A stretch of DNA of 64,000 bases from Octopus sinensis (taxonomy: Eukaryota). Shown here piece by piece: positions 1 through 56,921 of this stretch (positions are counted from its first letter, which is position 1; every line of letters starts with the position of its first letter). The position numbers were made by a program, and so were the translations under genes. The notes under the pieces were generated by a model that saw nothing but the letters and a program-made list of their open reading frames with translations, was not told the DNA's origin and made no database searches. Where the stretch lies: assembly GCF_006345805.1 (NCBI RefSeq), contig NC_042997.1:13702001-13766000 (forward strand). Direction: 5' to 3'.

Positions 1-1555
1 TCTAATTTCACTTCATAAGTTGTAACTGAATTGTAAGTATGTATTTGATTTATCCTTATGTAATGTTATTTTTGATTTCTGGTTAATTACGATGTATTTA
101 TGTTGTTTTCATAAGAGTGTTTATGTATATGAGATGGTTGGAGTTTTTAATTGTATAATTAATTTATTTATCTGTATGAGGTGGGTGTAAATATTGTTGT
201 ATATATCGAGTTTTAGTGGTATGTATATGGTATATGTGAGGAGCAATGTATCTTGTGTGTGTGTGTTTTGCGTGTGTGTGTGTGTGTGTGAATGTGTATT
301 TGGGTTGTTATTTAGGATTTGGGGATGCTGTGTTAATTTGTCTGTGTGGGAGGGAGTGGTTTTTGGTGTATATTGAGGTTTATAGTTAGTATAGGTTTGT
401 GTATAAGTCTTGGGTCTGTGGTTTACGTGTGGGTTTTTTTTGTGTGAATGTTGCGGTTAGGGGGATTGCTATATAAGTTTGTTATAGGTTTAGCAAAGGG
501 AGATTTTATCGTTATATGCTTTTATGAGTTTTGGCTTATCATGGTTTTTTTTAGGTATTCGTGGTATTTTGTCTATTTTAGGTGTTGGTTATTTTTTACA
601 TTGTTTCATTCATAATTTTTGAGTGGTGTTTTTTTGCCACGTGAATAACCGGGTGGTGGACTAGCGTTGCTTGGAATGTGAATGGATAGTGTAGTAGTGA
701 GGTAGGCATAGAGAATGGGATTGGGTTACTGCAAGTTGTTTGTTAGAGATGCTAGGTGAGTTAAAGCTCATAAATGTATATAATGTTTTTTGTGGTGTGT
801 AAGTATTGTTGTATATGTCGAGTTTAGTGAGTATGTTATAGGCGTATTGTGAGGGGGGAGTATATGTATCTTTTGTGTGTGAGTGTTTGCGTGCGTGTGA
901 GTGTGGGTTTTGTGTGTGAATGTGTATATGGGTTTGTTATTTAGGTTTTGGGATGTATGTGTTAATTTGTCTGTGTGGGGGGGGGAGGGGTTTGGTGTGT
1001 ATATTGAGGTTTATAAGTTAGTATAGGTATGTGTATAAGTCGTGAGTCTGTGTGTTTACGTGTGTGTATTTGTGTGTGAATGTTTAGGTTAGGGGTGTTA
1101 CTTTATAGGTTTGTTATAGAGTTTAGCAAAGGGAGATTTTATCGTTATATGTTTTTAAGAGTTTTGTTTTATCAGGGTTTTTTAGGGAATTCGTGGTAAT
1201 TAGTCTATATTTTCGATATGGATTATATATAGGTTATATATGGATTATATACTTATATTTTTTTTCATTTATACTTTAATTATTTATAAGTATTATTTTT
1301 ATATTTTAAAAAATTTGATTTTTTAGATTGGAAGTCCACCTGAAGATTGTCGATCAAGACAAGACGATTGTAGTGGCGGTTTTTTTGACTATTTATTAAT
1401 TTTATGTATTGATTAAGTCTTTCCTTGTTTGTTTTGCAAATAGTGGTTTTGTCTCAAATAATATTTTTATAATATTTTACTATAAAATTGGATTTAATTC
1501 CTAATCTTTTTTTTTTTTCCCTGTAAATTTGGATATATTCCCTAATATTTATTAT
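1..1555 (+). mobile_element. ORF-less PLE-derived element (GT-rich internally repeated body plus pseudo-LTR with degenerate hammerhead); runs off the window start
   Basis: Homologous to the reverse complement of 40089-41720. Internal units about 620 bp apart (approx. 195-575 vs 810-1200). HHR remnant at 1336-1376. Ends at a (TA)n tract. Confidence 0.75.
1336..1376 (+). ncRNA. Degenerate type I hammerhead ribozyme
   Basis: ccac CTGAAGA ttgtc gatcaa gacaa GA cgattg TA gtgg. Same family as 42009-42051, but GAAA is reduced to GA and loop III is mutated. Confidence 0.7.
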
Positions 1556-1609
1556 ATATATATATATATATGTATATATATAGATAATATATATGTATGT
1601 ATATACATA

Positions 1610-3871: not shown

Positions 3872-4022
3872 CATTCTTTTATTCTTTTACTCTTTTAAGT
3901 CATTTGACTGCGGCCATGCTCAAGCTTTTCGTCGTTCAGATCGAACCAAGGACTTATTGTTTGTAAGCCTAGTATTTATTCTATCAGTCTCTTTTGTAAA
4001 ACAGCTAAGTTACGGGGACGAA
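3870..4022 (-). mobile_element. SINE family B, 3' half
   Basis: Reverse complement contains ...agcatggccgcagtcaaatgact... tail. Confidence 0.8.
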
Positions 4023-4074
4023 AATACATGTTTTCGGTACGTATTAAAGCAACATAATTATGCATTCTTTAGTG

Positions 4075-4144
4075 ATCCCACTGATGAGCTACGTACGCCA
4101 AATTAATTTATTTGAGCATTAATAGCGAAACTCGTGTATGGGAT
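4075..4144 (+). ncRNA. Type I hammerhead ribozyme with canonical core
   Basis: atccca CTGATGA gcta [31 nt] tagc GAAA C tcgt G TA tgggat. Perfect 6-bp stem I, G-C-closed stem II, GUA site (cut after 4138). Confidence 0.85.
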
Positions 4145-4278
4145 TAACTAATTTTCTATTTTGTTCACTCTAGTGTTTGGGTTTAACTGTCCTTTCTAGC
4201 TTGCAAGAAGTCCTGTCAAAGGTCTTATCTCAGTGTATAAATCGTTATACACTCTCATATATATATAAATATATACAT

Positions 4279-6618: not shown

Positions 6619-8245
6619 TTGTGCATGCGTTTGTGTGTGAGTGTGCGTGTGTATGGATGGATGGATGATATATACATCTATATATATATTTCTTTACTAC
6701 CCACAAGGGGTTAAACACAGGGGGGATAAACAAGGACAGACAAACGGATTAAGTCGATTACATCGACCCCCAGTGCGTAACTGGTACTTAATTTATCGAC
6801 CCCGAAAGGATGAAAGGCAAAGTCGACCTCGGCGGAATTTGAACTCAGAACGTAACGGCAGACGAAATACGGCTACGCATTTCGCCCGGCGTGCTAACGT
6901 TTCTGCCAGCTCGCCGCCTATATACATCTATATAACTTTTTACACACACACACATACACACGATTTTTGTAACAAATGTGGACATAACTTTTTAGTAACT
7001 GATATAGGGCGTTCAAAATAAACATGAACGTAGAGTAACTCTTTCTGTATGGTAGCTCTTCTTTCTGCCATTCTCTGTTGGAATGCGATGAAATGAAGAG
7101 ACGACAATCCGTACACAAGCTCATGTTAAATGCCTTTGTGGATGATAATGTTGCCAGTCTCCTTGATAAACTGGAACGTGTCTGTACTGTGATCAAAAAC
7201 AGTACATTGAGGCACTAAAACCCGTGAAGAAGAAGAAATCGAACAAGTACTTTAAAACAATCCACATTCATTTTAGCAACGAACAGCCGCACACATCTTT
7301 AGTAACAAAATCACGCAATTAATATTTGGGTTTGTTTCACTGAACAGTTCGGATCTTGCGACCATCGATTCTCATTTTTTCAGTTCAATGAAGAACAATC
7401 TTCGGGAAACAGATTTGATGGCACAGAGGAGTAAAAGCAACTGTGAAGAAATGCGCACAACAGTGCACACCTACACGTATTCCAGTAGATTCGTGTGTTT
7501 GATTCGAAAATGGAGCCAATGCATCGTTTGATATGAAGACCATGTTGCATAGTTCCTTTGTAAGAAGAAAGAGTTTCTCTTCTAGCACCTGAAATGTGGA
7601 AGTTCTACGTCAGTTAATAATAAAACGTAAGCCAGCTTTAGTATTATTTTCGGGCAAAGGAGGGATATAAATACATACATACATATTTACATTCATACAC
7701 GCATAGAAATACACTCATATATATCCACATGCATACGTATATTTGTGTATTTGCGCATACGTAAACACGTGTACATTACTTTAAGATCAAGGCAGGTAAA
7801 AATTGAGTAGGGGTTTGTTATGTTTATTCTTTACACGTGAAATGTTTGTTGCTTAACGCCAAGGTCAGACAACAGTGGCATTCCACCCATGACCATCCCA
7901 TTATTTTATGGTATGTATCACTGCATTACCGAATTTGTTTCTTATATAAGGTTTGTTTACTGTTCCTAACTGATCCTAACTGACCATACGCCACTGTAAA
8001 AAGTCCTGTTGTAAAGTAAATATGTAATCTTGATATGCAGGTAGTGTTTGCCTTCTGATCTTAGTGTATTGATATATATTGATACGAAAAAATGAGAATG
8101 TGTTTATTTTATGTACCTGTTCTATTTTCTAGCACCCAGTCACTCCGAAATCTACTTTACTTTCCGTGTTCAAAATGTATACGCCAGTAAGATACGCAGA
8201 TAGATTGCAGTAATGATAGCCGGTCCTTTTAGGATAATATTTCAT
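6030..8245. repeat. 226-bp near-perfect inverted repeat (6030-6255 / 8020-8245) enclosing about 1.76 kb
   Basis: Arms differ at about 3 positions by manual comparison; no TSD found. Confidence 0.9.
6685..6918 (-). mobile_element. SINE family A, full-length young copy
   Basis: tRNA-like A/B boxes (GAGTTCAAATTCC). 16-bp TSD tatatacatctatata at 6669-6684 and 6919-6934. Confidence 0.92.
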
Positions 8246-11009: not shown

Positions 11010-11560
11010 TGTAATGCCGGAACAATGCGAGAAGGTACAAATTAAACTATAAAAGGAAAAGAAAGCAAAATAAATTTGCTTAAACTTCGGTTTATGACTC
11101 CTTCTTAAGGATATTTGGGAAAAGCGATAGTTCGAAAATTCGTTGCTCAGATGAGTGGGGGAGGAAGGAGGAGTGTGACATGCGCAGACTGATGTTGCTA
11201 TAGCAACCAGTCTGCATTGTGTAGTTCCTTCCTGTTGTGAGTGGCTGGCCTCTATTTTTAAAGAGGACCTCCATGATTCTGAGATCGCCCCTGTTGCGTA
11301 GGGTTGCTCTGGTGAAACCTTTAAAATTCTAGGTTTAGCATTTCTTTAGGAGATTCATTATTGAAATGACCGTGCGCATGTGTTCTTTTATACGGTTGTG
11401 CAATTTTCTGCTGGTGCCCTCTATGTAGTATGCCCAACATTTACTGCAGACTATTTCATATACCACATAGGCCCTAGAACACGTTTTAATGTTGTTGATA
11501 GGACAGCTGGTTAGTGTGCACCCAACAATGCTAGACTCAACATACAGATGGTGCGCACCG
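11010..11560 (-). mobile_element. PLE 3' fragment with GIY-YIG endonuclease remnant
   Basis: Minus-strand translation CTLTSCPINNIKTCSRAYVVYEIVCSKCWAYYIEGTSRKLHNRIKEH (approx. 11530-11390). Not in the ORF track. Confidence 0.8.
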
Positions 11561-12959: not shown

Positions 12960-15650
12960 CCAGAACGAACCTTACTGAGAATATATAATATATTTTCAAT
13001 ATTGTACCGATTCATATAAGCACCACATCCAAACATGGGACATAGGGACACACCTTTCAATACCCTTTCAAGAACAAGCACCATACATCACAACAGGGCA
13101 CTCCACAACAACAAGGAACAACAACAAAACAGCTACTGTCCCAATCACCTCAATCATTTTTTAAACCCAATACGCAAACACAGAGACACGAGATAGCACC
13201 AAACAGACAGGAAGAGCCAAAGTGATAAAAATCATCAATCTAACTCGCAGAGAGCTAGCAAGCAACCCAAATCAACATACACGCCAGAGGGCTCAAGCTT
13301 ACACCCACCCCCAACACCTCAATTACAACGAAATGAAAGAAGACGTCGCGGAATTCTGTAGAAAATTACAACTCGCTGAGGAGCTATACGACAAATACAA
13401 GGATGAATCGTTAGTCCGAAATAGGAGTAACTACACCCCTTTAAAAGTAAGAACAAAACTCTTGATCATTTCTGTGAAGACATCTCGAATTACCCATATC
13501 AACATATACACAAACAAAAACACAGGCCAAACTTCAGTAAAAAAGAATGGGCTGAGCTGAACAAATTAAAAGAAGACTAAACATTACCAATCAAAAGGAT
13601 GATAAAGGGAGTGCAGTTGTCTTAATGGACACGGTATACTATATAACTCTAGTACTATCCATATTAGAAGACAGAACATATTATGAAAAGGGCCAACACT
13701 ACAGTCAGCAGAAAATAATGAGAAATCTAAAATTCATGTTAAACCTATATAGAGAAGGGCTCGCCGCCAACAAGGAATACGATTATATGACCAACTTCAA
13801 AAGTAAACCCAGTCAATTCTACAGTATTCCTAAGATACACAAAACTGAGAAAATAAATAACGCATGCAAGATAGCCACAGACATAATAATCAAGGTCCCT
13901 GCTCCTAATGAGCTCAAATTGAGACCTATAATAGGAGGGCCCACATGTGAAATCTACCACCTCAGTAACTTTTTAGATATCCCCGTAAAACCATTCCTCA
14001 AGCATATCAAAAGCTACATAAAGAACGACCTGGATATGCTCAATCACCTCTCTAAAACAATAAACAAAAACACCCTACTAGTATCCTTCTATGTAGTCAA
14101 CTTCTATTCTAATATCGCTCACAGCCAAAGAAAAGAGGCAATTCAATTCTGGCTAGAGAATTACGCCAATGAACCCCCACATCGCATCAAATAAAAATTC
14201 GTAATAGAAGGGCTAACATTCATCTTGGAGAATAACTACTTTGTTTTCAAGGACAACTGCTATCGACAAAAATCGGGCACTACGATGGGTACGAGAATAA
14301 CCATCTCCTTTACTAACCTAGTCATGGGATATCTATAAATCAGTCTTTATCGTAAGGTACTAGAAAAATACGGCAACCCATTCTCCCTCTGCATAGTAAA
14401 TAACTGGAAGAGGTATCTGGATGACTGTTTCATTCTTTAGCATGAAAGTATAGAGAGACTTAAAGAATTGCAAGTACTTATAAATGGACTTGACGTAAAC
14501 ATTCAATACACGATGGAATATAGCCGTCAACAGCTTCCATTCCTCAACATCCTCATTAAGAAATCTAACAACGAAATAGAAACAGATATATACTATAAAC
14601 CCACTGACTCCAAGCAATATCTACCGTTCAACTCCTGCCATCCCAGACACACCAGAATGAATATCCCTTTCAACCTGGCAAAAAGGATCTGTACTATAGT
14701 TTCTAATACAAGCACCAGGGACACATGACTATATGAACTAATGGATACACTCATCACCAGGAACTACCCACCATCACTAACTGATATATGCTTTCTACGT
14801 GTCCTACAGTTCAACTAACACGAACTCAGACATCCCAAATTGAAGAAGGATTTACAACCGAAAGCCCTACCATACATTTCCACAAATAACCCTCTTCACA
14901 ATGAAGCCTTCGACACCATCCTCCAGAACATTCCCCTACAAAAAAGGAACCACAGAACGAATTTAATCCTCGAAACGCATACCATCATAAAGAGCAAAAG
15001 ATAGCCCAAATCTATGAAAAGTCTCCTAACACAAGCTCGAATACGCTCGACAACACTGAAGCCGTCAGTAAAAAAATGCGGAAGCCCCAAATGTGGGATA
15101 TGCGTCAATTTAATTGAGGGATCAGAGTTCTCCTTCAAACAGAGACAATGTTTCACAGTGAAAAGCAGCTTAACATGTACTTCGGAGAACCTGATATACG
15201 CACTAAAATGCTTTCGGTGTCAAGAGCAATACATAGGCCAAACCAAAAACAGTCTACGTCAAAGAATGGTTCTGCATAGATTCCAGATCAAAATTCGGAT
15301 CATACAGAAAAAAAATAGCATTCAGCGAACTCATCGACATTTGCGAACCCAGCTTCAGAATTCCCCCCCCCCTATCAATTCAAGGACGATGCAACCTAGT
15401 GTTAGCGCATTAGTAAAGAGTCATACTTTATCCCAAAATATAAACCTCTTTTGAATGCGTCCACCACAAATGACACTATTACAAGGGCCTTAGAATAATA
15501 CCCACGCAAATATTAAAAACGATATATATTCAGTACAGTCACTATTCATGAAATTATTTAGAACAATTCCGATCACAACGGTTCACTTTTATATCACTTG
15601 ACCATTTAAGAGGATTCCACCAACCTTCTGCTACTGTCGTACCACTCCCG
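12960..15650 (+). mobile_element. Near full-length degenerate Penelope-like element (RT, thumb, Cys-rich linker, GIY-YIG)
   Basis: DKGSAVVLMD, LRPIIGGPTC, YRQKSGTTMGT, WKRYLDDCFI (YLDD 14414-14425), LPFL, YYKPTDSKQYL..NSCHPRHT..NIPFNLAKRIC, KCGSPKCGIC, NLIYALKCFRCQEQYIGQT..LRQRM..H. Multiple stops and frameshifts. Confidence 0.95.
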
Positions 15651-15654
15651 CATT

Positions 15655-15686
15655 TTTCTTTCTTCTTCTTCTTCTTCTTCTTCTTC

Positions 15687-15734
<48 letters not shown>

Positions 15735-15735
15735 T
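15655..15735. repeat. Compound (CTT)n(ATT)n microsatellite
   Basis: Directly visible. Confidence 0.95.
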
Positions 15736-21332: not shown

Positions 21333-21565
21333 AGGCGGCGAGCTGGCAGAAACGTTAGCACGCCGGGAGAAATGCTTAGCGGTACTTTGTCTGCCGTTAC
21401 GTTCTGAGTTCAAATTCCTCCGAGGTCGACTTTGCCTTTCATCCTTTCGGGGTCGATAAATTTAGTACCAGTTTACGCACTAGGGTCGATGTAATCGACT
21501 TAACCCCTTTGTCTGTCCTTGTTTGTCCCCTCTATGTTTAGCCCCTTGTGGGCAATAAAGATATA
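21333..21565 (+). mobile_element. SINE family A, full-length
   Basis: 14-bp TSD agaaggaagagtta at 21319-21332 and 21566-21579. Confidence 0.92.
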
Positions 21566-23556: not shown

Positions 23557-23781
23557 TAAGGCGGCGAGCTGGCAGAAACGTTAGCACGCCGGGCGAAATG
23601 CGTAGCCGTATTTCGTCTGCCGTTACTTTCTGAGTTCACATTCCGCCGAGGTCGACTTTGCCTTTCATCCTTTCGGGGGTCGATTAAATAAGTACCAGTT
23701 ACGCACTGGGGTCGATATAATCGACTTAATCCGTTTGTTTGTCCTCTCTGTGTGTAGCCCCTTGTGGGCTGAAAAGAAATA
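23557..23781 (+). mobile_element. SINE family A, full-length
   Basis: 16-bp TSD taa(t/c)gctggtgttgct at 23541-23556 and 23782-23797. Confidence 0.92.
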
Positions 23782-36956: not shown

Positions 36957-38703
36957 AAGTTAATCCAAACAAGAAAACAAAAAGACAACAACGCGAGGAT
37001 GTGGAACAAATAAAGTATTATTGGGCGCTCAGGAAAGAAGGGAAGAAGGAGGTTACGACGTTTCGAGCGGAGCTCTTCGTCGGAAATATAGGAGAAAGAA
37101 AGATCCCGAGGTGGGAGGACAGAGGGAAAAAAATGCAAGTGGTCTTCACGAGGTCACGAACAGAGACGGACATTAAAAAGTCATTTTATATCTACTAGTC
37201 AAAGAGGATTATTATTCACGATAAAGGAAAGAAAATTTTTGAAATTTCCCAAAATATACATTCAGAAAGGATTTTTCAGGGGAGAAATTTCACTGAATAA
37301 TTTTTCTTATTTCTTTGAACAAAATTTATACTGAAATCATTTTGTGTTTAACTAAAAAAGCATAACTATGAAGAAATAGGGGAAAATACTTGAACTTAAA
37401 TTTCTTACGAGTTTAGTTTTAAAATACATAAATTTTAAGAAATTGTTACTCTTACTACGATATTCTACCTTAGAATTCCTTATTGCAAATATCAGTACCC
37501 AAAAATAATGAATCACTACCGAAAAAGAGAACTGAAGCAATCATTGCTGAATTTCCAATCTGATTCACCTAATAATGCTAAACAGAAGAGAATTGCAAAC
37601 GAAGTTTCGCAGCTCAAGGGAGGTCTTGCATGGCCCCCTCATTGGATGATCTTGGACAGGTCGAGTGCCAAACAGTGCAGCCAGTTCTAGAAAAGTTTGA
37701 TCCAAAAATTTATGGAAATCAAAGAAGTGACTTCTCGTCAAGCTGGTATATTGGTCGTTTATGTTTAGAGTATTTTCTTTCAAAGAAAGCCTTGTTTTCT
37801 TTTGCTTGTCGGCACTTTAATACTTCTGCTCAAGCTGATAATTGTTTTATTAAAAATGGATATTCTAATTGGCATCATGCAAAAGAAAACAAAACGAAGC
37901 ACGCAAAAGCTGCATCCCATATCCAAGCTATGGTAACATGGAAGGAATGCCAACAGCGTTTATCCACAACAACATCCGTGTCTTCATACTTGCAAAATGA
38001 TCAGTTGAACAAAAATCGTTATTATATCAGTTCCATTGTTGATATTGTTCATTTTCTTTGTGCAAATAAATTGCCTTTTCAAGGAAACAGAAATGAAGCT
38101 TTTCAGGATCTTTATTCAGAAGATGACACACAGCCTTGTTGGTCTTTTTATGAAATTATTCCAGTACACATTAGAGAAAGACTCAAAGGTAATGGAATGT
38201 TACAGCACGATTCCAAAAAATGCGACCTACACCTCAGCAGCAATGCAAAACAAAATCATCGAATGGTTGAGAAGACACACTGTCAGCCGCGTGGTCGATG
38301 TTTATTTGAAATTATATAAAAAATAATGTTTAAAGATTTGGCTGTTATCTCTAGCATGTTGAAAGACCTATTAGGCTTAACTATGTGCTTATTGAAAACC
38401 ATTTAAAAACATATTGGAGTCGATACATTCGACTAAAAATTCTTCGAGGTGATGCCCCAGTAAGGCCTCAGTTTAATGATTGCAACAAGTAAAATGAAAA
38501 TAAAAACGAAATAGATCAGAAGTTTTGACCAGGCTAGGCGTCAAGAAATGTGAAAAAAAAATGAAAACAATAATCGAAAAATATAAGCATGAGGCTTTAG
38601 CCCACTTTAATACTTTAAGTAGGGGCTTTTGTCCGTACCCTTGTTCAGCACCTCCAGCTATCAAGATAGCACCCCCAGTTGCAATCAGCTGGCTACGTGG
38701 CTG
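36418..38703 (+). mobile_element. Internally deleted hAT DNA transposon with ZMYM1-like/TTF zinc finger plus DUF4371-type transposase N-terminus
   Basis: Perfect 8-bp TSD AGTACAGC (36410-36417 / 38704-38711). TIR CAGTCATTAGTC vs rc CAGCCACGTAGCC. Subterminal agcaccccc motifs. ORF 37630-38319 gives FSSSWY..LEY.....FSFACRHF...GYSNW..H..A..H..AM..W and IVHFLCANKLPFQG. Confidence 0.88.
36957..37150 (-). mobile_element. PLE pseudo-LTR nested in the hAT element, with degenerate hammerhead (about 37051-37087)
   Basis: Reverse complement is ttt CCGACGA a gagc tcc gctc GAAA CG TC gtaa, with poor stem I. The tail matches 42254-42310, 42475-42552 and 62748-62832. Confidence 0.65.
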
Positions 38704-39149: not shown

Positions 39150-39900
39150 CCCATCATAAAATACATGTCGAATCAGTCTATAGAAACTACTAACAAAATA
39201 CACAGTAATAAAGTAGAAGTAGAAAGCATAGCATCATTTTGTTCAATTTCACCCCAAGAAATATCAAAAATGAAGTTAATTTTTTTCAGCCCTAATTAAA
39301 AAAATAACACCACCCAACCAGTCATATATACTATACATTACCCAATAGATGACGTCAATGCCGGTTACAGCCGAACAAAGATTTTCAACAGTATAAAAAC
39401 AAGTAAACCTCAAGGCTCAGTTTTCACAAAGCCAGGAAAACAAATATAACAGCATTTCAAATTCATCATCAAGGGAGTTATTTACGAAGTGAATGTAAAA
39501 TTTCAGGCAAATAGGACGAAACAAGGGAAAAAAATCTACCACTGGTATGAACGAAGGCATCTTTAAAAGCTTTTTCGTCAGTCATGAATCTAACTTTTTC
39601 GAATGAGAAAAACGGAAATACAAAAGCCTTATCCACGTATATGCGTTACGTGAAATGACAATGATATCACAATCAGAGACGTCAAAATACAGTAAAAAGA
39701 AAAAAAAGAATTTTAGCCAGGAATTTGCAGCAGGAAAATAATTTATTGATCTACTGAAGGTAAAAGAAATACGATCATTATATACCGGCGTTAATTTCGT
39801 TAGCATTGAAAAAAACTCTTTGTTGATATATCATGAACGAAAGCGTCTCCGGCGATAAACTTGAAGCAATGGAAAAAGTATTCAACTTCGATAATGGTTA
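39150..39900 (+). mobile_element. Decayed PLE C-terminal (GIY-YIG) fragment
   Basis: IILFNF (cf. IIWFNPP), DVNAGYSRT (cf. NVKVSYSCT), KGVIYEVNV...KKIY(T)GMNEGIFK, NTKALSTYM.YVK. Frameshifted. Confidence 0.6.
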
Positions 39901-40271
39901 CATGCATACATATACATTATATAAAGAAAGTTTGAGAAACATTTTAGAGGCATGGTATATACTTGCATGAGTTATTACATCTAGAGTACTTTACTCTGAT
40001 TAAGAAGTTGGATTTTAAGAATTTACACTCTTTGTGCCAATCCTTACGTAAGCATCATACAAACTACAAACTATACTTCATATATATATATATAATAAAT
40101 ATTAGGGAATAAATCCAAATTTACAGGGAAAAATCAGATTTAGGACTAAATCCAATTTTATAGTAAAATATTATATAATATTAATTAGAGACAAAACCAC
40201 TATTTTGCAAACAAAACAACAGGAAAGACTTAATCAATACATAAAATTTTAATAAAAAGTCAAAAAAACCG

Positions 40272-40314
40272 CCACTACAATTGTTTCTTGTCCTGATCGA
40301 CAATCTTCAGGTGG
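40272..40314 (-). ncRNA. Minimal type I hammerhead ribozyme (intact)
   Basis: Exact reverse complement of 42009-42051. Confidence 0.88.
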
Positions 40315-41091
40315 ACTTCCAATCTAAAATATCAATATTTTAAATATAAAAAATAATAATTTTAAAATAATTAAAGTATCAATGAAAAAATATAAATATA
40401 TAATCTATATATAACCTATATATAATCCATATATAATCAATATATAACAATATATAAACTAAAATAAACCTATCAACATTAAATATAAATATAAATATAA
40501 ATATAAAACAAAATAAAAATAAACTATATATACACCCATACACATATAACTAATTATATATAACCATATCTAAATACATACACTAAATCACACACCTATA
40601 TATATATCCCTATACATACACATAAAGACGTCTAGGCAACGATAAATAAATAAAAAGCCAAATACTTCAACACAATACTTATTCATACTCTCACACACAC
40701 ATACAACCCACATTCATAAACAATATACGTAAACCCGCTCACACATACATATACAAACATACAGAACTCGATATATACACCAATATATTCACACCCACAA
40801 CTATACAGATAAATAAATTACGCAAATAATCCCCCCCCCCCACACACACACACCCATTCACACATACATAAACACTCAAAAGCAAAATAAATAATTCTTT
40901 GCACTTGTTGATCAAACGTTTTTTTTTTAAATTATAAATGGAATAATATATATCAACTTAAATATACAGAATCTACTACAAAACACCAATAAACGATCAT
41001 GATAAATGAAACCCACATACATATTATGATAAAACTAACTCTCCCCTACCATACACATTACCCTATATAGCAAACCCATATACACATTCAC

Positions 41092-41203
41092 TAAATGATG
41101 TTCGTTTCCAGAGCGGGAATACTTTTTATACACATGTAAGGTTCCTATGGTAACCCCACATATGTACAAAAAGCACTCCCGCTCCGGAAACGAACATCAT
41201 TTA
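41092..41203 (-). repeat. 112-bp palindrome, 52-bp stem (hairpin MITE or RNA hairpin)
   Basis: Forward vs reverse-complement comparison shows 7 mismatches in 52 bp, all transitions. TA at both ends. Confidence 0.9.
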
Positions 41204-42008
41204 AAATTATGAATGGAGAAATGGAATAAATGGAATTAAAAATTATATTCACGTGGTAAAACGAACATTACTTAAAAATTATGATGAAATAATGTAATAA
41301 AATAACAAACATCGTAAAAGACATAAATTACTACGAATTATTTAATAAAACTACCATGATAAACTAAAACTCATAAAAACATATAATGATAAAATCTCCC
41401 TTTACTAAACTCTATAACAACCTATATAGCAATCCCCTAACCTAAACATTCACACACAATACACACACGTAAACCACACACCCACGACATATACAATACC
41501 CCTCCCCCTCACTCACCATACCTATACATACGTATAAACCTCAATATATACACCAAAAACCCACTCCCACCCCACACAGATAAATGACAATACATCCCCA
41601 ACCTATATAGCAAACCCATAACACATTCACACACAAATATACATACGTAAAACACACACACACAACATATACATATACTCCCTCACATATACATATACAT
41701 ACTCACTAAACTCGATATATATAGGTGTGTGATTTAGTGTATGTATTTAGATATGGTTATATATAATTAGTTATATGTGTATGGGTGTATATATAGTTTA
41801 TTTTTATTTTGTTTTATATTTATATTTATATTTATATTTAATTGTTGATAGGTTTATTTTAGTTTATATATTGTTTATATATTGATTATATATGGATTAT
41901 ATATAGGTTATATATAGATTATATATTTATATTTTTTCATTGATACTTTAATTATTTTAAAATTATTATTTTTTATATTTTAAAATATTGATATTTTAGA
42001 TTGGAAGT

Positions 42009-42051
42009 CCACCTGAAGATTGTCGATCAGGACAAGAAACAATTGTAGTGG
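42009..42051 (+). ncRNA. Minimal type I hammerhead ribozyme (intact)
   Basis: ccac CTGAAGA ttgtc gatcag gacaa GAAA C aatt G TA gtgg. Palindromic CAATTG, GUA site (cut after 42047). Confidence 0.9.
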
Positions 42052-42136
42052 CGGTTTTTTTTACTTTTTATTAAAATTTTATGTATTGATTAAGTCTTTC
42101 CTTGTTTGTTTTGCAAAATAGTGGTTTTGTCTCTAA

Positions 42137-42182
<46 letters not shown>

Positions 42183-42205
42183 AATATACTATATATAACA
42201 CAATA

Positions 42206-42247
<42 letters not shown>

Positions 42248-42253
42248 ATATAT

Positions 42254-42302
42254 AAACACGCAAGGACGTGGAACAAATAAAGTATTATTGGACGCTCAGG
42301 AA

Positions 42303-42351
<49 letters not shown>

Positions 42352-42416: not shown

Positions 42417-42482
<66 letters not shown>

Positions 42483-42552
42483 TTCCTGAGCGTCCAATAA
42501 TACTTTATTTGTCCACGTCCTTGCGTTGTTGTTTTTTGTTTTTGTTTCTTTG
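42254..42552. mobile_element. Inverted pair of PLE pseudo-LTR tails around (TA)n-hairpin-(TA)n
   Basis: Arms 42254-42310 and 42475-42530. 11-bp perfect hairpin at 42362-42389. Confidence 0.7.
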
Positions 42553-44514
42553 ATTGATTGATTGATTGATTGATTCTAGTTTCAGCTTATGAGCTGTGGC
42601 CATGCTGGGGCACCGCCATTTGGTGTTGCTACTTGGTTTCACTTCACGAAAGCTTTCTAGCAACTGCCATTTGGTGCATGAGAGAGTTCGATGCAACCTC
42701 CCTCATCTGCCCCTCCTGCCGTGAAGTTGGTTCATCTGGGACACCTGACAGGAAGAGATCCAGCTTCATTTTAAAGACATCTGCATCCACCCCATGCAGG
42801 TCTCTCAGGTTCTTCGGGAGGATATTGAAGAGCTGTGGGCCTCGGAAGCCCAGGCTATCACAGAATCTTGTCCTACATCTTGATGGCAAGTTTGGAGTCC
42901 TAGGCACCACGCAGTGGCGCCCAGTTCTGGCATTTGCGTAACTCTCGATGCCAAAGTTCAGGACACGTCCCTCCAGGATCTTCCAGTTGTATATTATGGC
43001 ATATCTTTCCCGCCTACGCTCCAGGGAATATAGTTTTAATCTCTTGAGTCTTTCCCAGTAGCTTACATTCTGCATAGAGGCTATCTTCTTCGTGTAGCTA
43101 CGTTGGATCGCCTCGAGCTCTGTGATCAACTTGACACTGGATGGTGACCATAACTGAGAGCAGTAGTCAAAGTGGCTTAGGACAAGTGTCCCCCAGAGAA
43201 CCATCATGGTTTCTTGTTCTCTTGTTCTAAAGGTTCTGAGGATCCATCCGGCCAGTCGTCTACATTTCATTGCCAATTTAGCAACATGTACACGAAAGGT
43301 CGCGTCATCACTCATGTAAATACCTAGGTCACGCACTGATTGTGCCTCTGGGATTGCTATTCCTCCGGGTCCAGTGTATTCATTGGGTATTGCATTTAGT
43401 TTTGCATGCTGATAGTATAGAGCTTGAAACTTTTCAGCATTGAACTGCATGCTATTCTTTTCGGCCACTTGTATATTTTGTCCAGCTCACATTGCAGGTG
43501 TTTAGTGTCCTCAGGGTTCTGTATTGCCTGTGAAACTTTTGTATCATCTGCATAACTTGTGATCGTGGCTCTCTGCGTGGCTGAGGGCATGTCTGAGAGG
43601 GCCATTATGAACAGTAGTGGTCCCAGAACAGTGCCCTGCGGACACCGCTCACTATTTGCGTGTTAATGGAAGTGGCCCCATGGGCTACTACCACCTGACT
43701 TCTATCTTTCAGAAAGTCATGAAGCCATTCTCCCAGTTTTCCAACTATGTTGAGATCACGCAGTTTGTGACATATCATTCCATGATCGACTTTATCAAAG
43801 GCCTTTGCAAAGTCGAGATATATCACTTCCACATTTGAGTGGTTGAGCAGCCGTTTCAGCACCCAGTCATAGTGTTGTAGGAGCTGAGTTAAACAGCTTC
43901 TCCCTGGTCGGAAACCATGTTGGGTGTCGGGCAGCAAGTCATTCTCTTCAAGGAAGGTGATCAGCTTCCTTCTGACTATTCGTTCCATGACCTTGCTGAT
44001 GTGTGAGGTCAGAGAGATAGGTCTATAGTTCTTGGCTTCCGCTCTGCTACCTCCTTTATGAATGGGGCATATTTTACCTTCCTTCAGTTTTCTTGGAAGT
44101 TTGCCAGCTGCAAGGAAGCTCTGAAAGAGTAACTGCAGTGGTCTTGCTAGGACTCTCTTACATGCTTTTAGGAGGATTGCCGGGAATCCATCGGGGCCAG
44201 TAGCTGAGTCTGTTTTCATTTCATCTATAGCCTTGATTACATCGTCTTCCTTTATATCGATGTAATCTATCGTCGCCGCCTCTGATTTTATATCTGCAGT
44301 GGTAAAAAAGTCAGTTGGATTGGTGATTTGGAGATGCCCAAGGGGTGGAGTGAAAACACTCTTGAATTGCTCATTCAGTATTTCACTTACCCTCATTGGT
44401 TTTCCTGTAAGTGTGCCATCCTTTTCGAGGAGTGGCCCTATTCTACAGTGCACCGTAGCTGTTTCTTTGGCATACCTGTAGAAAGCTCTGGGGTTAGATT
44501 TTATGTTGTCTATG
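42553..44514 (-). mobile_element. Young 5'-truncated CR1/L2-group LINE (RT domain and C-terminus) with (ATCA)n tail
   Basis: NYRPISLTS, QHGFRPGRSCLTQLL, YLDFAKAFDKVDH, SGV(P)QGTVLGPLLF, YADD, RDLGIYM, LYSLERRRER. Only two 1-bp frameshifts (about 43640 and 43467). 7-bp TSD TTCTTTG (42546-42552 / 44515-44521). Confidence 0.95.
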
Positions 44515-44540
44515 TTCTTTGTTTGGATTAACTTTATATA

Positions 44541-44573
<33 letters not shown>

Positions 44574-53769: not shown

Positions 53770-54136
53770 TAGGGGGGAGTGGGCCAGTCGATTAGATCGA
53801 CCCCAGTACGCAACTGATACTTAATTTATCGAGCCGAAAGGATGAAAAGCAAGGTCGAACTCGGCGGAATTTGAACTCAGAATGTAGCGACATACGAAAT
53901 ACCTATTTATTTATTACCCACAAGGGGCTAAACACAGAGGGGACAAACAAGGACAGACATAGGTATTAAGTCGATTACATCGACCCCAGTGCGTAACTGG
54001 TACTTAATTTATCGACCCCGAAAGGATGAAAGGCAAAGTCGACCTCGGCGGAATTTGAACTCAGAACGTAGCGGCAGACGAAATACCGCAAAGCATTTCG
54101 CCCGGCGTGCTAACGTTTCTGCCAGCTCGCCGCCTT
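53770..54136 (-). mobile_element. Tandem SINE family A copies (old partial 53770-53900, young full 53902-54136)
   Basis: The young copy is nearly identical to 6685-6918. Confidence 0.88.
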
Positions 54137-56857: not shown

Positions 56858-56921
56858 GTTACATATCACCTGTGATTTCGCAATTAATGCAGAATATGCA
56901 TTCTATGCTCTTCAGTGCAAC
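56858..56921 (-). ncRNA. Full three-helix type I hammerhead ribozyme
   Basis: Reverse complement is GTTGCA CTGAAGA GCA..AGAAT gcat ATTCT..TGC GAAA TCA cagg TGA TA TGTAAC. 6-bp stem I (one G-U), G-C-closed stem II, 3-bp stem III with tetraloop, AUA site. Confidence 0.8.

What the first reader, a model, noticed from the sequence alone, without database searches (positions are those of the whole stretch)
40089..42141. ORF-less, retrozyme-like element with two intact hammerhead ribozymes in inverted pseudo-LTRs
Seen in the sequence: a 2-kb element with no coding remnant, a strongly G+T-skewed and internally repeated body, and two near-identical arms of about 420 bp in inverted orientation. Each arm has a perfect minimal type I HHR (CUGAAGA / GAAA / GUA, palindromic CAATTG loop III), and a second family member lies at 1-1555. 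Established: PLE pseudo-LTRs carry minimal HHRs, PLE insertions often have an inverted 5' pseudo-LTR, and non-autonomous HHR retroelements (retrozymes) make circular RNAs. Inference: this is a non-autonomous ribozyme-bearing family mobilised by PLE RT, possibly undescribed in cephalopods. The palindromic loop III predicts cleavage as a dimer or in trans.
Basis: partly seen in the sequence, partly recalled or inferred. Interest (0 to 1): 0.88.

Follow-up and report, generated by a model that had tools for sequence, protein, structure and literature searches.

The report
Penelope-type twin insertion with hammerhead motifs
The 2-kb "element" is two truncated copies of one non-coding, hammerhead-bearing retroelement family, inserted head-to-head in a (TA)n microsatellite of an octopus-like genome. 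This is the known insertion pattern of Penelope-like elements, not a new retrozyme.

Summary
Inverted arms lie at 40180-40605 and 41715-42143 (3 substitutions and 6 gap positions over 424 aligned nt). Each carries the same hammerhead-type motif. No coding remnant is present, and a second family member lies at 1-1558.

The unit is not one element with two pseudo-LTRs. The body is collinear with copy 1 only on the minus strand. The locus is therefore a 1.62-kb 5'-truncated copy (41714->40094, minus) plus a 0.43-kb inverted 5'-truncated copy (41715->42143, plus). Their 5' ends meet at a TATATAT microhomology and their 3' ends face outward into (TA)n. An ~86-nt 3' tail is present at one end only.

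These are published signatures of Penelope-like element (PLE) integration. The hammerhead core and an 8-nt palindromic helix III are there, and a dimer fold is energetically plausible while the monomer fold is not. It is not "perfect": 10.1-11.1 is U-A, helix I has 4 bp, and no Rfam model matches.

The two motifs lie on opposite strands, so circular-RNA (retrozyme) biology is not supported. Whether the family is non-autonomous or the long non-coding end of a coding PLE could not be decided. Copy 1 runs off the window, and no cephalopod genome could be searched by DNA. Verdict: new member of a known kind, low to moderate interest.

The parts
40094..41714 (-). Long copy of the family, 1.62 kb, 5'-truncated relative to copy 1. 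Its 3' end (...CCCTAATATTTATT) is at 40094, abutting (TA)7.
   Evidence: Collinear with copy 1 on the minus strand only: 41721-41246 = copy-1 200-647, and 40444-40092 = copy-1 1206-1555. No ORF and no PLE-protein match.
41715..42143 (+). Short inverted copy, 0.43 kb, 5'-truncated. Its 3' end lies at 42139-42143 in (AT)n, and it lacks the ~86-nt tail.
   Evidence: Matches the reverse complement of 40180-40605 with 3 substitutions and 6 gap positions over 424 nt.
41715..41721 (.). Head-to-head junction of the two 5'-truncated ends, with a TATATAT microhomology shared by both copies.
   Evidence: Arm identity starts at 41715, while homology of the long copy to copy 1 runs to 41721.
42009..42051 (+). 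Hammerhead-type motif, type I. Helix I CCAC/GUGG, core CUGAAGA, helix II UUGUC(GAUCAG)GACAA, GAAA, helix III C(AAUU)G, then UA. Predicted cleavage is between 42047 and 42048.
   Evidence: Chance expectation. Dimer versus monomer energies. No Rfam match.
40272..40314 (-). Identical hammerhead-type motif in the long copy. Predicted cleavage is between 40276 and 40275.
40094..40179 (-). 3' tail of ~86 nt, made of two ~37-nt modules (40138-40174 and 40101-40137) that resemble the module before them (40175-40211). It is present in the long copy and in copy 1 and absent from the short copy.
   Evidence: the repeat finder family D11 at 73%. The alignment shows the right arm stopping after ...CTCTAATTAAT while the other two copies end after ...CCCTAATATTTATT.
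40606..41714 (-). Non-coding body. On the sense (minus) strand it is G+T-rich and C-poor. It holds diverged repeats of a ~0.5-kb unit (41721-41246 and 40820-40674) and ~170-nt sub-repeats.
41092..41203 (.). 112-nt internal hairpin (52-nt arms, 87% complementary) inside the body. It is absent from copy 1 and is probably a local inverted duplication.
   Evidence: (pair I18). Only sub-threshold miRNA-model hits.
40080..40093 (.). (TA)7 at the left flank, a remnant of the target microsatellite.
42144..42254 (.). (AT)n at the right flank, the target microsatellite.
1..1558 (+). Second family member (copy 1), cut by the window start. It has a 611-nt internal duplication (181-579 vs 792-1211), a broken hammerhead at 1336-1376, the same 3' terminus ...CCCTAATATTTATT, and is followed by (AT)n.

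Best explanation
The locus is one integration event of the Penelope-like-element (PLE) type, not a single element framed by two pseudo-LTRs.

Proposed mechanism: an RNA of a hammerhead-bearing family was reverse-transcribed from both nicked strands of a (TA)n microsatellite. One cDNA reached 1.62 kb (now 41714->40094, minus strand). The other reached 0.43 kb (41715->42143, plus strand). Their incomplete, 5'-truncated ends were joined in the middle at a TATATAT microhomology. The two RNA-3' ends therefore face outward and the shared 426 nt appear as inverted arms. Reverse transcription started at two alternative sites that lie in repeated ~37-nt modules of the 3' tail. This explains why ~86 nt of tail is present at one end only.

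Each copy carries, 92-96 nt upstream of the shorter terminus, a minimal type I hammerhead motif. Its 8-nt palindrome ACAAUUGU lets two sense RNAs pair into a double hammerhead. In this locus the two motifs are on opposite strands, so a read-through transcript would hold one ribozyme plus its antisense. It would fold into a ~426-bp hairpin rather than release a circle.

Shown: the anatomy, orientation, termini, junction, motif, lack of coding sequence, and the second copy.
Inferred: priming on both strands, the alternative initiation sites, mobilisation by a PLE RT/GIY-YIG protein, and any cleavage activity.
Open: whether the family is a dedicated ORF-less parasite or the long non-coding (pLTR) end of a coding PLE. 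I lean slightly to the latter.
For: 1. Strand logic. The body aligns to copy 1 only in minus orientation and continues into the left arm. The right arm is an extra inverted copy of the 3' end.
2. Arms are 99.3% identical by substitutions, against 87.5-89% to copy 1. This fits one event from one template.
3. All three 3' ends abut (TA)n.
4. The tail is at one end only, and the termini fall at equivalent points of three similar modules...GTCTCTAAT...GTCCTAAAT and ...TTCCCTAAT.
5. The junction microhomology lies at 41715-41721.
6. The hammerhead descriptor expects 0.03 sites per shuffled window against 4 observed. The strict form was found in 0 of 200 shuffles. The dimer fold lies within 2 kcal/mol of the dimer MFE, whereas the monomer fold is 13 kcal/mol above the monomer MFE.
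7. Literature. PLE insertions are highly 5'-truncated and often have an inverted 5'-truncated copy at the 5' end, a 30-40-bp tail at one end only, and a microsatellite bias (PMC8557442). A purified PLE protein cleaves and extends both DNA strands, prefers AT-rich DNA, and starts reverse transcription at two internal sites whose spacing is the tail. Those sites lie 85-92 nt downstream of its hammerhead cut site (PMC11167929). PLE hammerheads are minimal type I motifs with a palindromic helix III that act as dimers (PMC4209133).
8. The window is octopod: its SINEs are ~91% identical to Octopus bimaculoides. Octopus vulgaris has 30 recently active Penelope families (PMC13282606).
9. Two more hammerhead-type motifs in the window sit ~120-130 nt upstream of ends that abut (TA)n.
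Against: - No RT/GIY-YIG sequence is linked to this family in the window. The only PLE coding remnant (13129-15462) shares no DNA with it and shows no hammerhead.
- The tail is ~86 nt, not the published 30-40 bp. No direct pseudo-LTR tandem is seen.
- The hammerhead lacks the G10.1-C11.1 pair that Cervera & de la Pena call highly conserved, and it lacks the extra base between 9 and 10.1. It has a 4-bp helix I, matches no Rfam model, and is not the predicted MFE fold.
- Conservation cannot be judged. Two motifs are copies from one event and the third is broken.
- Target-site duplications cannot be read inside (TA)n.
- The right arm's missing tail could also be a later deletion in the microsatellite.
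Confidence: 0.72

Rival explanations
1. The family is a dedicated ORF-less, non-autonomous parasite of PLE machinery. It would be SINE-like: a non-coding, G+U-rich repeated body plus a PLE-type 3' end with a hammerhead. The copies seen would be (nearly) all there is to it. This is the core of the first reader's reading without the circular-RNA part. It is compatible with the twin-insertion anatomy.
For: - At least 1.56 and 1.62 kb upstream of the 3' end are free of ORFs and of PLE-protein similarity in two independent insertions.
- The body is built of diverged internal repeats whose number and spacing differ between copies, as in other non-coding composite retroelements.
- No ATG-initiated frame starts at the hammerhead, unlike the Anolis PLE whose ORF starts in helix II.
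- Non-autonomous PLE derivatives are an accepted category (PMC7229834; bioRxiv 10.64898/2026.07.22.740005).
Against: - The long copy is 5'-truncated relative to copy 1, and copy 1 runs off the window. The family's true 5' end is therefore unseen.
- Recently active Penelope insertions in O. vulgaris average ~5.4 kb: 1,795,539 bp over 329 insertions (PMC13282606). That leaves room for pLTRs of more than 1 kb, so 1.6 kb of non-coding 3' sequence is not unusual there.
- PLE copies are mostly 5'-truncated.
Confidence: 0.33
2. It is a retrozyme in the working sense. Transcripts would be cut at two hammerheads, and the excised RNA would be circularised and serve as the transposition intermediate.
For: Two intact copies of the motif lie 1.7 kb apart, and there is no ORF. 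A palindromic helix III is typical of retrozyme and satellite type I hammerheads.
Against: - The two motifs are on opposite strands (42009-42051 + and 40314-40272 -). No single transcript has two sense ribozymes.
- There are no direct tandem monomers of 150-450 bp.
- Copy 1 has a single, broken motif.
- A read-through RNA would sequester the ribozyme in a ~426-bp duplex with its antisense.
Confidence: 0.04
3. It is a foldback- or MITE-like DNA transposon with long terminal inverted repeats containing short sub-repeats. The hammerhead-like string would be incidental.
For: The arms are long (426 bp), AT-rich, and carry 11-bp and 6-bp tandem sub-repeats (40396-40470, 41864-41927). Both flanks are TA-rich.
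Against: - The outer termini are not symmetrical: the right arm lacks the ~86-nt terminus.
- Copy 1 shows one arm joined to at least 1.2 kb of body with no inverted partner in view, and it has the same 3' terminus.
- The inner arm boundary coincides with a microhomology junction.
- The hammerhead descriptor is far above chance and recurs in two other (TA)n-abutting elements.
Confidence: 0.05
4. The inverted arm arose after insertion, by a local inverted duplication or replication-fork template switch in the (TA)n tract. Alternatively it is an assembly artefact.
For: - The region is rich in small palindromic rearrangements: a 77-nt perfect inverted duplication at 42273-42349/42436-42512 and a 112-nt hairpin at 41092-41203.
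- Most differences between the arms are indels in low-complexity runs, which could be sequencing noise.
Against: - The duplicated segment is exactly the element's 3' end with its own terminus in (TA)n. This is the arrangement published for PLE insertions.
- It ends at a module boundary of the tail rather than at a random point.
Confidence: 0.06

Closest known systems
Minimal type I hammerheads in the pseudo-LTRs of Penelope-like elements (Cervera & de la Pena 2014, PMC4209133)
   Same: Type I topology, CUGANGA/GAAA/UH core, very short helix III with palindromic 15.2-16.2 and loop, a short helix I (4-5 bp in their families), a predicted dimeric active form, and a location near the 3' end of a retroelement.
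   Different: U10.1-A11.1 instead of the highly conserved G10.1-C11.1. No extra base between positions 9 and 10.1. Helix II is 5 bp and A/U-rich rather than 6-8 bp. No coding PLE is attached in the window.
PLE insertion architecture: 5'-truncated copies, an inverted 5'-truncated copy at the 5' end, a one-sided tail, and microsatellite targets (Craig et al. 2021, PMC8557442)
   Same: All four features are present at this locus.
   Different: The tail is ~86 nt (two ~37-nt modules) rather than 30-40 bp. No direct partial tandem (pLTR) is seen. No ORF is present.
Poseidon PLE of Anolis carolinensis studied in vitro (Frangieh et al. 2024, PMC11167929)
   Same: Both DNA strands are cut and extended. 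The target is AT-rich. There are two alternative reverse-transcription start sites, and the sequence between them is the optional tail. The start sites lie 85-92 nt downstream of the hammerhead cut site, against 92-96 nt here.
   Different: In Anolis the ORF starts inside the hammerhead, whereas here no ATG frame does. The initiation region there is an AC-rich stem-loop, whereas here it is U-rich with no predicted conserved structure.
Metazoan non-LTR retrozymes (Cervera & de la Pena 2020, PMC7229834; Li et al. 2026, bioRxiv 10.64898/2026.07.22.740005)
   Same: ORF-less, low GC, type I hammerhead with a palindromic helix III, and thought to depend on PLEs.
   Different: Retrozymes are direct tandem repeats of 150-450-bp monomers, each with a sense hammerhead, and yield 170-400-nt circular RNAs. 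Here there is one sense motif per copy, a body longer than 1.1 kb, and inverted rather than direct duplication.
Sm-alpha, the SINE-like hammerhead-bearing repeat of Schistosoma mansoni (named in PMC6155905)
   Same: A dispersed non-autonomous retroelement carrying a type I hammerhead.
   Different: By my recollection (not checked here) Sm-alpha is ~0.3 kb with a canonical, efficient hammerhead. This family is at least 1.6 kb with a minimal, non-canonical motif.

Membership tests
Hammerhead ribozyme, minimal type I (PLE type) | Catalytic core C3-U-G-A-N-G-A9 ... G12-A-A14 ... A15.1-U16.1 followed by H17 | tested here: met
   CUGAAGA ... GAAA ... U-A|G at 42013-42047 and on the minus strand at 40310-40276.
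Hammerhead ribozyme, minimal type I (PLE type) | Type I topology with helices I and II formed and occurrence above chance | tested here: met
   Helix I CCAC/GUGG (4 bp), helix II UUGUC/GACAA (5 bp). The descriptor expects 0.03 sites per shuffled window. The strict form was found in 0 of 200 shuffles.
Hammerhead ribozyme, minimal type I (PLE type) | Short helix III with palindromic 15.2-16.2 and loop 3, allowing a dimeric extended helix III | tested here: met
   ACAAUUGU is a perfect 8-nt palindrome. The dimer hammerhead fold is -23.2 kcal/mol against a dimer MFE of -25.2. The monomer fold is +4.7 against -8.3.
Hammerhead ribozyme, minimal type I (PLE type) | G10.1-C11.1 base pair (called highly conserved in PMC4209133) | tested here: not met
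   Positions 10.1/11.1 are U/A in all three copies. The two other hammerhead-type motifs in the window do have G-C.
Hammerhead ribozyme, minimal type I (PLE type) | [quoted passage not shown] | tested here: not met
   Helix II starts directly after A9.
Hammerhead ribozyme, minimal type I (PLE type) | Match to a curated hammerhead covariance model | tested here: not met
   No Rfam hit in the whole window at gathering score, and none in 39900-42300 at E<=10. My own assumption, not tested, is that models with a longer helix III would miss minimal motifs of this kind.
Hammerhead ribozyme, minimal type I (PLE type) | Covariation or conservation of the helices across family members | tested here: inconclusive
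   Only three copies are available. Two are identical and come from one event. The third keeps helices I and II but has lost GAAA and helix III.
Hammerhead ribozyme, minimal type I (PLE type) | Self-cleavage at the predicted site | not testable with these tools
   This needs transcription and cleavage assays.
Penelope-like element (autonomous) | ORF with a telomerase-like RT and a GIY-YIG endonuclease | tested here: not met
   No ORF and no tblastn match to 60 PLE proteins in the element or in copy 1. The only PLE coding remnant is at 13129-15462 and is unrelated at the DNA level.
PLE-type insertion (product of PLE machinery) | Constant 3' end with variable 5' truncation | tested here: met
   Three copies of 0.43, 1.62 and at least 1.56 kb share the 3' region.
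PLE-type insertion (product of PLE machinery) | Inverted 5'-truncated copy adjacent to the 5' end | tested here: met
   41715-42143 (+) is joined to the 5' end of 41714->40094 (-). The criterion comes from PMC8557442.
PLE-type insertion (product of PLE machinery) | Optional tail extension at only one end of the insertion | tested here: met
   About 86 nt is present at the left end and in copy 1 and absent at the right end. It is longer than the published 30-40 bp but is built of ~37-nt modules.
PLE-type insertion (product of PLE machinery) | AT-rich or microsatellite target | tested here: met
   All three 3' ends abut (TA)n.
PLE-type insertion (product of PLE machinery) | Direct partial tandem forming a pseudo-LTR | tested here: not met
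   No direct repeat of the 3' region occurs within either copy.
Metazoan non-LTR retrozyme | Direct tandem repeats of 150-450-bp monomers, each with a sense type I hammerhead (at least 2 consecutive) | tested here: not met
   TRF finds no such array. The two motifs are on opposite strands, 1.7 kb apart.
Metazoan non-LTR retrozyme | Expression as small circular RNA | not testable with these tools
   No transcriptome access.
Plant LTR retrozyme | Type III hammerheads in direct LTRs, PBS/PPT, and a 4-bp TSD | tested here: not met
   The motif is type I and the repeats are inverted. The TSD cannot be read inside (TA)n. PBS and PPT were not looked for.
Foldback/MITE-type DNA transposon | Terminal inverted repeats that reach both outer ends, and a fixed TSD | tested here: not met
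   The right arm lacks the terminal ~86 nt of the left arm. The TSD cannot be determined in (TA)n.

The most novel reading that the evidence does not exclude
The family is a dedicated, ORF-less, C-depleted (G+U-rich) parasite of octopod Penelope-like elements. It would be distinct from tandem retrozymes. Its 3' tail is a triplicated ~37-nt initiation module, so reverse transcription can start at alternative modules. That would be natural genomic evidence for the internal-initiation mechanism so far shown only in vitro for one lizard PLE. It would also be a non-canonical (U10.1-A11.1) hammerhead kept active by dimerisation or by the PLE protein.
Probability: 0.25. Interest if true: 0.45.

Novelty: new member of a known kind. 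Interest (0 to 1): 0.27.

Why it matters
If the reading is right, this is a clean, young example (arms ~99% identical) of the PLE double-strand-primed twin insertion, in a lineage where PLEs are still active. Its two alternative 3' termini fall at repeated tail modules. This matches the internal-initiation model derived in vitro and could be used to map initiation sites genome-wide.

It also adds a cephalopod family to the catalogue of hammerhead-bearing retroelements. Its 10.1-11.1 pair deviates from the rule, which is a cheap test of how much of the hammerhead consensus PLE-associated motifs really need.

It does not open a new kind of system. Every component has a published counterpart.

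Tried and rejected
1. Rfam on the whole window at gathering score and on 39900-42300 at E<=10: no hammerhead hit. The only hits were sub-threshold miRNA models on hairpins and (TA)n.
2. Exact-pattern scans for more family members. Two metagenome scans and one viral-contig scan found nothing. The prokaryote genome scan gave two 21-mer chance matches in sphingomonads with no hammerhead context.
3. A composite query of pseudo-peptides translated from the element, hoping that gene callers had called spurious ORFs on other copies: no hit.
4. Exact look-up of eight window ORFs, to locate the source contig and read upstream of copy 1: none is in the collection.
5. Fetched loci around relatives of the window's PLE and LINE proteins: L001 (O. 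bimaculoides), L002-L004 and L005. None holds the family. L001 shares SINEs with the window, L005 shares the LINE, and L004 shares nothing.
6. The window's own PLE remnant (13129-15462) as the autonomous partner: rejected for lack of any shared DNA, hammerhead or tail.
7. The neighbouring RT ORF (43605-44561): it is an APE-type LINE on the minus strand, arranged tail-to-tail with the right arm, and unrelated.
8. A conserved stem-loop in the three tail modules: RNAalifold predicts none.
9. A strand-specific editing signature (excess A/G differences) as the cause of the G+U-rich strand: mismatch spectra show no such excess.
10. The body as a decayed tandem array of hammerhead monomers: no CUGANGA and no similarity to the 3' arm in the body.
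Full report
**Observation**

The window holds a 2.05-kb stretch bounded by (TA)n. Its ends are inverted copies of each other. The repeat finder reports three collinear inverted pairs between 40221-40605 and 41715-42102 at 93-100% complementarity. blastn joins them into 40180-40605 vs 41715-42155 at ~98%. A MAFFT count gives 424 aligned positions with 3 substitutions and 6 gap positions.

Both arms hold the same 43-nt string, CCAC CTGAAGA TTGTC GATCAG GACAA GAAA CAATTG TA GTGG. It lies at 42009-42051 on the + strand and 40314-40272 on the - strand. There is no stop-free frame above 72 codons in any of the six frames. tblastn with 60 Penelope-like-element (PLE) proteins hits the window only at 13129-15462, plus a small piece at 11320-11484.

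A second member of the family occupies 1-1558 on the + strand. Identity is 87.5-89% over the last ~350 nt and ~79-80% over the body. The strand caveat is that the body is C+A-rich on the + strand. Its G+T-rich, C-poor strand (T 44%, G 26%, A 24%, C 6.6%) is the minus strand.

**Anatomy**

Copy 1 gives the family's polarity: a G+T-rich body, then the hammerhead in sense, then a 3' tail ending ...CCCTAATATTTATT, followed by (AT)n.

In the 2-kb unit the body aligns to copy 1 only in minus orientation. Window 41721-41246 corresponds to copy-1 200-647, and 40444-40092 to copy-1 1206-1555. The body also runs without a break into the left arm.

The unit is therefore two copies:
- A long copy on the minus strand, 41714->40094 (1.62 kb).
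- A short copy on the plus strand, 41715->42143 (0.43 kb). This consists only of the family's 3' region.

The two 5' ends meet head-to-head. Arm identity begins at 41715, while homology of the long copy to copy 1 runs to 41721. The junction thus lies in a shared TATATAT.

The long copy begins at the equivalent of copy-1 position ~200. Copy 1 extends further 5' with the same C-poor look on reading, and is cut by the window edge. The 2-kb unit is therefore not a complete element, and 'ORF-less' is established only for the 3'-terminal ~1.6 kb of the family.

**3' ends**

The left arm and copy 1 end identically (...CCCTAATATTTATT|(TA)n). The right arm stops ~86 nt earlier (...GTCTCTAATTAAT|(AT)n).

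The last ~120 nt of the family are three similar ~37-nt modules. Family D11 puts two of them at 73% identity. Each ends in a related motif...GTCTCTAAT...GTCCTAAAT and ...TTCCCTAAT. The short copy ends just after module 0. The other two copies end just after module 2.

All three 3' ends abut (TA)n. No conserved stem-loop is predicted for the modules.

**The ribozyme motif**

Read as a type I hammerhead, the string has:
- Helix I CCAC/GUGG.
- Core CUGAAGA.
- Helix II UUGUC(GAUCAG)GACAA.
- G12-A-A14, then A15.1-U16.1.
- C15.2-G16.2 closing an AAUU loop.
- A17, with cleavage predicted between 42047 and 42048.

A descriptor with these elements finds 0.03 sites per dinucleotide-shuffled window against 4 observed. 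The stricter form (helix I >=4, II >=5, III >=3) occurs in 0 of 200 shuffles.

The monomer hammerhead fold costs +4.7 kcal/mol against an MFE of -8.3, and the MFE is no better than shuffles (z = +0.7). Two molecules paired through the 8-nt palindrome ACAAUUGU give a double hammerhead at -23.2 kcal/mol. That is within 2 kcal/mol of the dimer MFE of -25.2. This fits the published view that PLE hammerheads are built to act as dimers and cleave poorly in vitro (PMC4209133).

Several points count against 'perfect':
- The 10.1-11.1 pair is U-A, not the G-C that the same paper lists as highly conserved.
- The extra base between positions 9 and 10.1 is absent.
- Helix I has four pairs.
- No Rfam model matches, even at E<=10.

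Conservation cannot be assessed. The two intact motifs stem from one event, and copy 1 has lost GAAA and helix III (GAAACAATTG -> GA--CGATTG).

**Context**

The window is from an octopod. Several SINE copies are ~91% identical to Octopus bimaculoides locus L001. The nearest named relatives of its TE proteins are from O. bimaculoides and Argonauta hians.

The RT ORF next to the element (43605-44561) belongs to a frameshifted, 5'-truncated APE-type LINE on the minus strand. It is 89.5% identical to Logan contig L005, lies tail-to-tail with the right arm, and is unrelated to it.

The PLE remnant at 13129-15462 shares no DNA with the family and has no hammerhead nearby. Its relatives L002 and L003 also lack one.

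Two other hammerhead-type motifs lie at 4073-4146 (+) and 56921-56858 (-). Both have G10.1-C11.1. Each lies ~120-130 nt upstream of an element end that abuts (TA)n. Hammerhead-bearing retroelement ends in (TA)n therefore recur in this genome.

**Mechanism**

The anatomy matches point by point what is published for PLE integration:
- Copies are highly 5'-truncated. Often an inverted 5'-truncated copy lies at the 5' end, a tail is present at one end only, and insertions are biased to microsatellites (PMC8557442).
- A purified Poseidon protein cleaves and extends both target strands, prefers AT-rich DNA, and starts reverse transcription at two internal sites. The sequence between those sites is the optional tail. 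The sites lie at +111-118 of the ORF while the hammerhead cuts at +26, a spacing of 85-92 nt (PMC11167929). Here the shorter terminus lies 92-96 nt downstream of the predicted cut.

I therefore read the locus as one event. An RNA of this family was copied from both nicks of a (TA)n target. Initiation was after module 2 on one strand and after module 0 on the other. The two unfinished cDNAs were then joined at a TATATAT microhomology.

The anatomy is shown. Both-strand priming, alternative initiation and the identity of the enzyme are inferred.

The hammerhead's role is also inferred. In PLEs it is thought to process multimeric transcripts. In the Anolis system it needed the protein and was dispensable for insertion in vitro.

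At this locus the two motifs face each other on opposite strands. A read-through RNA would carry one ribozyme and its antisense and would fold into a ~426-bp duplex. Excision of a circle is not expected.

**Comparison and membership**

The locus works like a PLE insertion and meets four of five insertion signatures. The direct pseudo-LTR tandem is missing. It fails the defining test of an autonomous PLE, because it has no RT/GIY-YIG ORF.

It also fails the defining test of an animal retrozyme. Retrozymes are direct tandem monomers of 150-450 bp, each with a sense hammerhead (PMC7229834; bioRxiv 10.64898/2026.07.22.740005). TRF finds nothing of this kind here.

As a hammerhead it meets the core, topology and palindrome criteria. 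It fails the G10.1-C11.1 criterion and the covariance-model criterion.

A foldback-type DNA transposon is unlikely. The outer ends are asymmetric, and copy 1 shows a solo arm with the same terminus.

**What stays open**

The question is whether the family is a dedicated non-coding parasite or the long non-coding (pLTR) end of a coding PLE.

Recently active Penelope insertions in O. vulgaris average ~5.4 kb: 1,795,539 bp over 329 insertions (PMC13282606). That leaves room for non-coding ends of more than 1 kb. PLE copies are also mostly 5'-truncated. I therefore put the dedicated non-autonomous reading at about one third.

I could not obtain further copies:
- Pattern scans of the public collections found nothing relevant.
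- A pseudo-peptide search found nothing.
- The window's ORFs are not indexed.
- About 60 kb of fetched loci do not contain the family.

**Verdict**

The 'retrozyme-like element with two pseudo-LTRs' framing is not. This is a young, tidy PLE-type twin insertion of a hammerhead-bearing, non-coding 3' region in an octopod genome: a new member of a known kind. The features most worth following up are the triplicated tail module with alternative termini and the non-canonical 10.1-11.1 pair.

Noticed in passing
window 4073-4146 (+): A second hammerhead-type motif from a different family: UGAUCCCA-CUGAUGA-GCUA...UAGC-GAAA-CUCGUG-UA|UGGGAUUA. It has G10.1-C11.1 and an 8-bp helix I, and the stretch folds well (z = -4.2). 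It sits ~120 nt upstream of an element end at 4257 that abuts a microsatellite. Its 5' side (3876-4028) is a SINE-like repeat with four other copies in the window.
   Followed up: partly
window 56858-56921 (-): A third hammerhead-type motif: GUUGCA-CUGAAGA-GCA...UGC-GAAA-UCACAGGUGA-UA|UGUAAC. It lies in a ~480-nt segment between a (CA/CG)n tract and (TA)n, ~130 nt upstream of the (TA)n-abutting end at ~56735.
   Followed up: partly
window 13129-15462 (+): A decayed Penelope-like element ORF (RT plus C-terminal GIY-YIG, several stops). The best relatives are 57% identical, and O. bimaculoides is at 52%. It ends near a (CTT)n(ATT)n tract at 15655-15735. No hammerhead is seen nearby, and two relatives fetched from public contigs (one a 3.87-kb-period tandem array) lack a canonical one as well.
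   Followed up: partly
window 42575-44561 (-): A 5'-truncated, frameshifted APE-type LINE directly right of the element, 89.5% identical in DNA to a Logan contig (L005). It ends in a (TCAA)n-like tract at ~42550-42575 and is unrelated to the hammerhead family.
   Followed up: yes
window 42273-42349 and 42436-42512: A perfect 77-nt inverted duplication around an 86-nt centre, each arm ending in (AT)n. The same ~57-nt unit occurs again at 36987-37043. This looks like another small repeat inserted twice, tail-to-tail, in the same (TA)n tract.
   Followed up: partly
window 41092-41203: A 112-nt near-perfect hairpin (52-nt arms, 87% complementary) inside the body of the long copy. It is absent from copy 1 and part of its flank is duplicated at 41259-41301. 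It gave only sub-threshold hits to miRNA models (best 34.9 bits against a gathering score of 100).
   Followed up: partly
window 1-1215 and 40606-41714: The sense strand of the family is strongly C-depleted (5-7% C; T 44-45%, G 26-30%). Mismatch spectra between copies show no excess of A/G differences, so an editing origin is not supported. The cause is unexplained.
   Followed up: partly
window 53928-54131, 21337-21541, 6712-6915, 23563-23745: ~200-bp SINE-like repeats ~89-92% identical to a repeat in Octopus bimaculoides (L001 1868-2071). This is the basis for calling the window octopod.
   Followed up: partly
window 37630-38319 (+): A 229-aa ATG-initiated ORF with no Pfam match at E<=0.01. 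It was not examined further.
   Followed up: no
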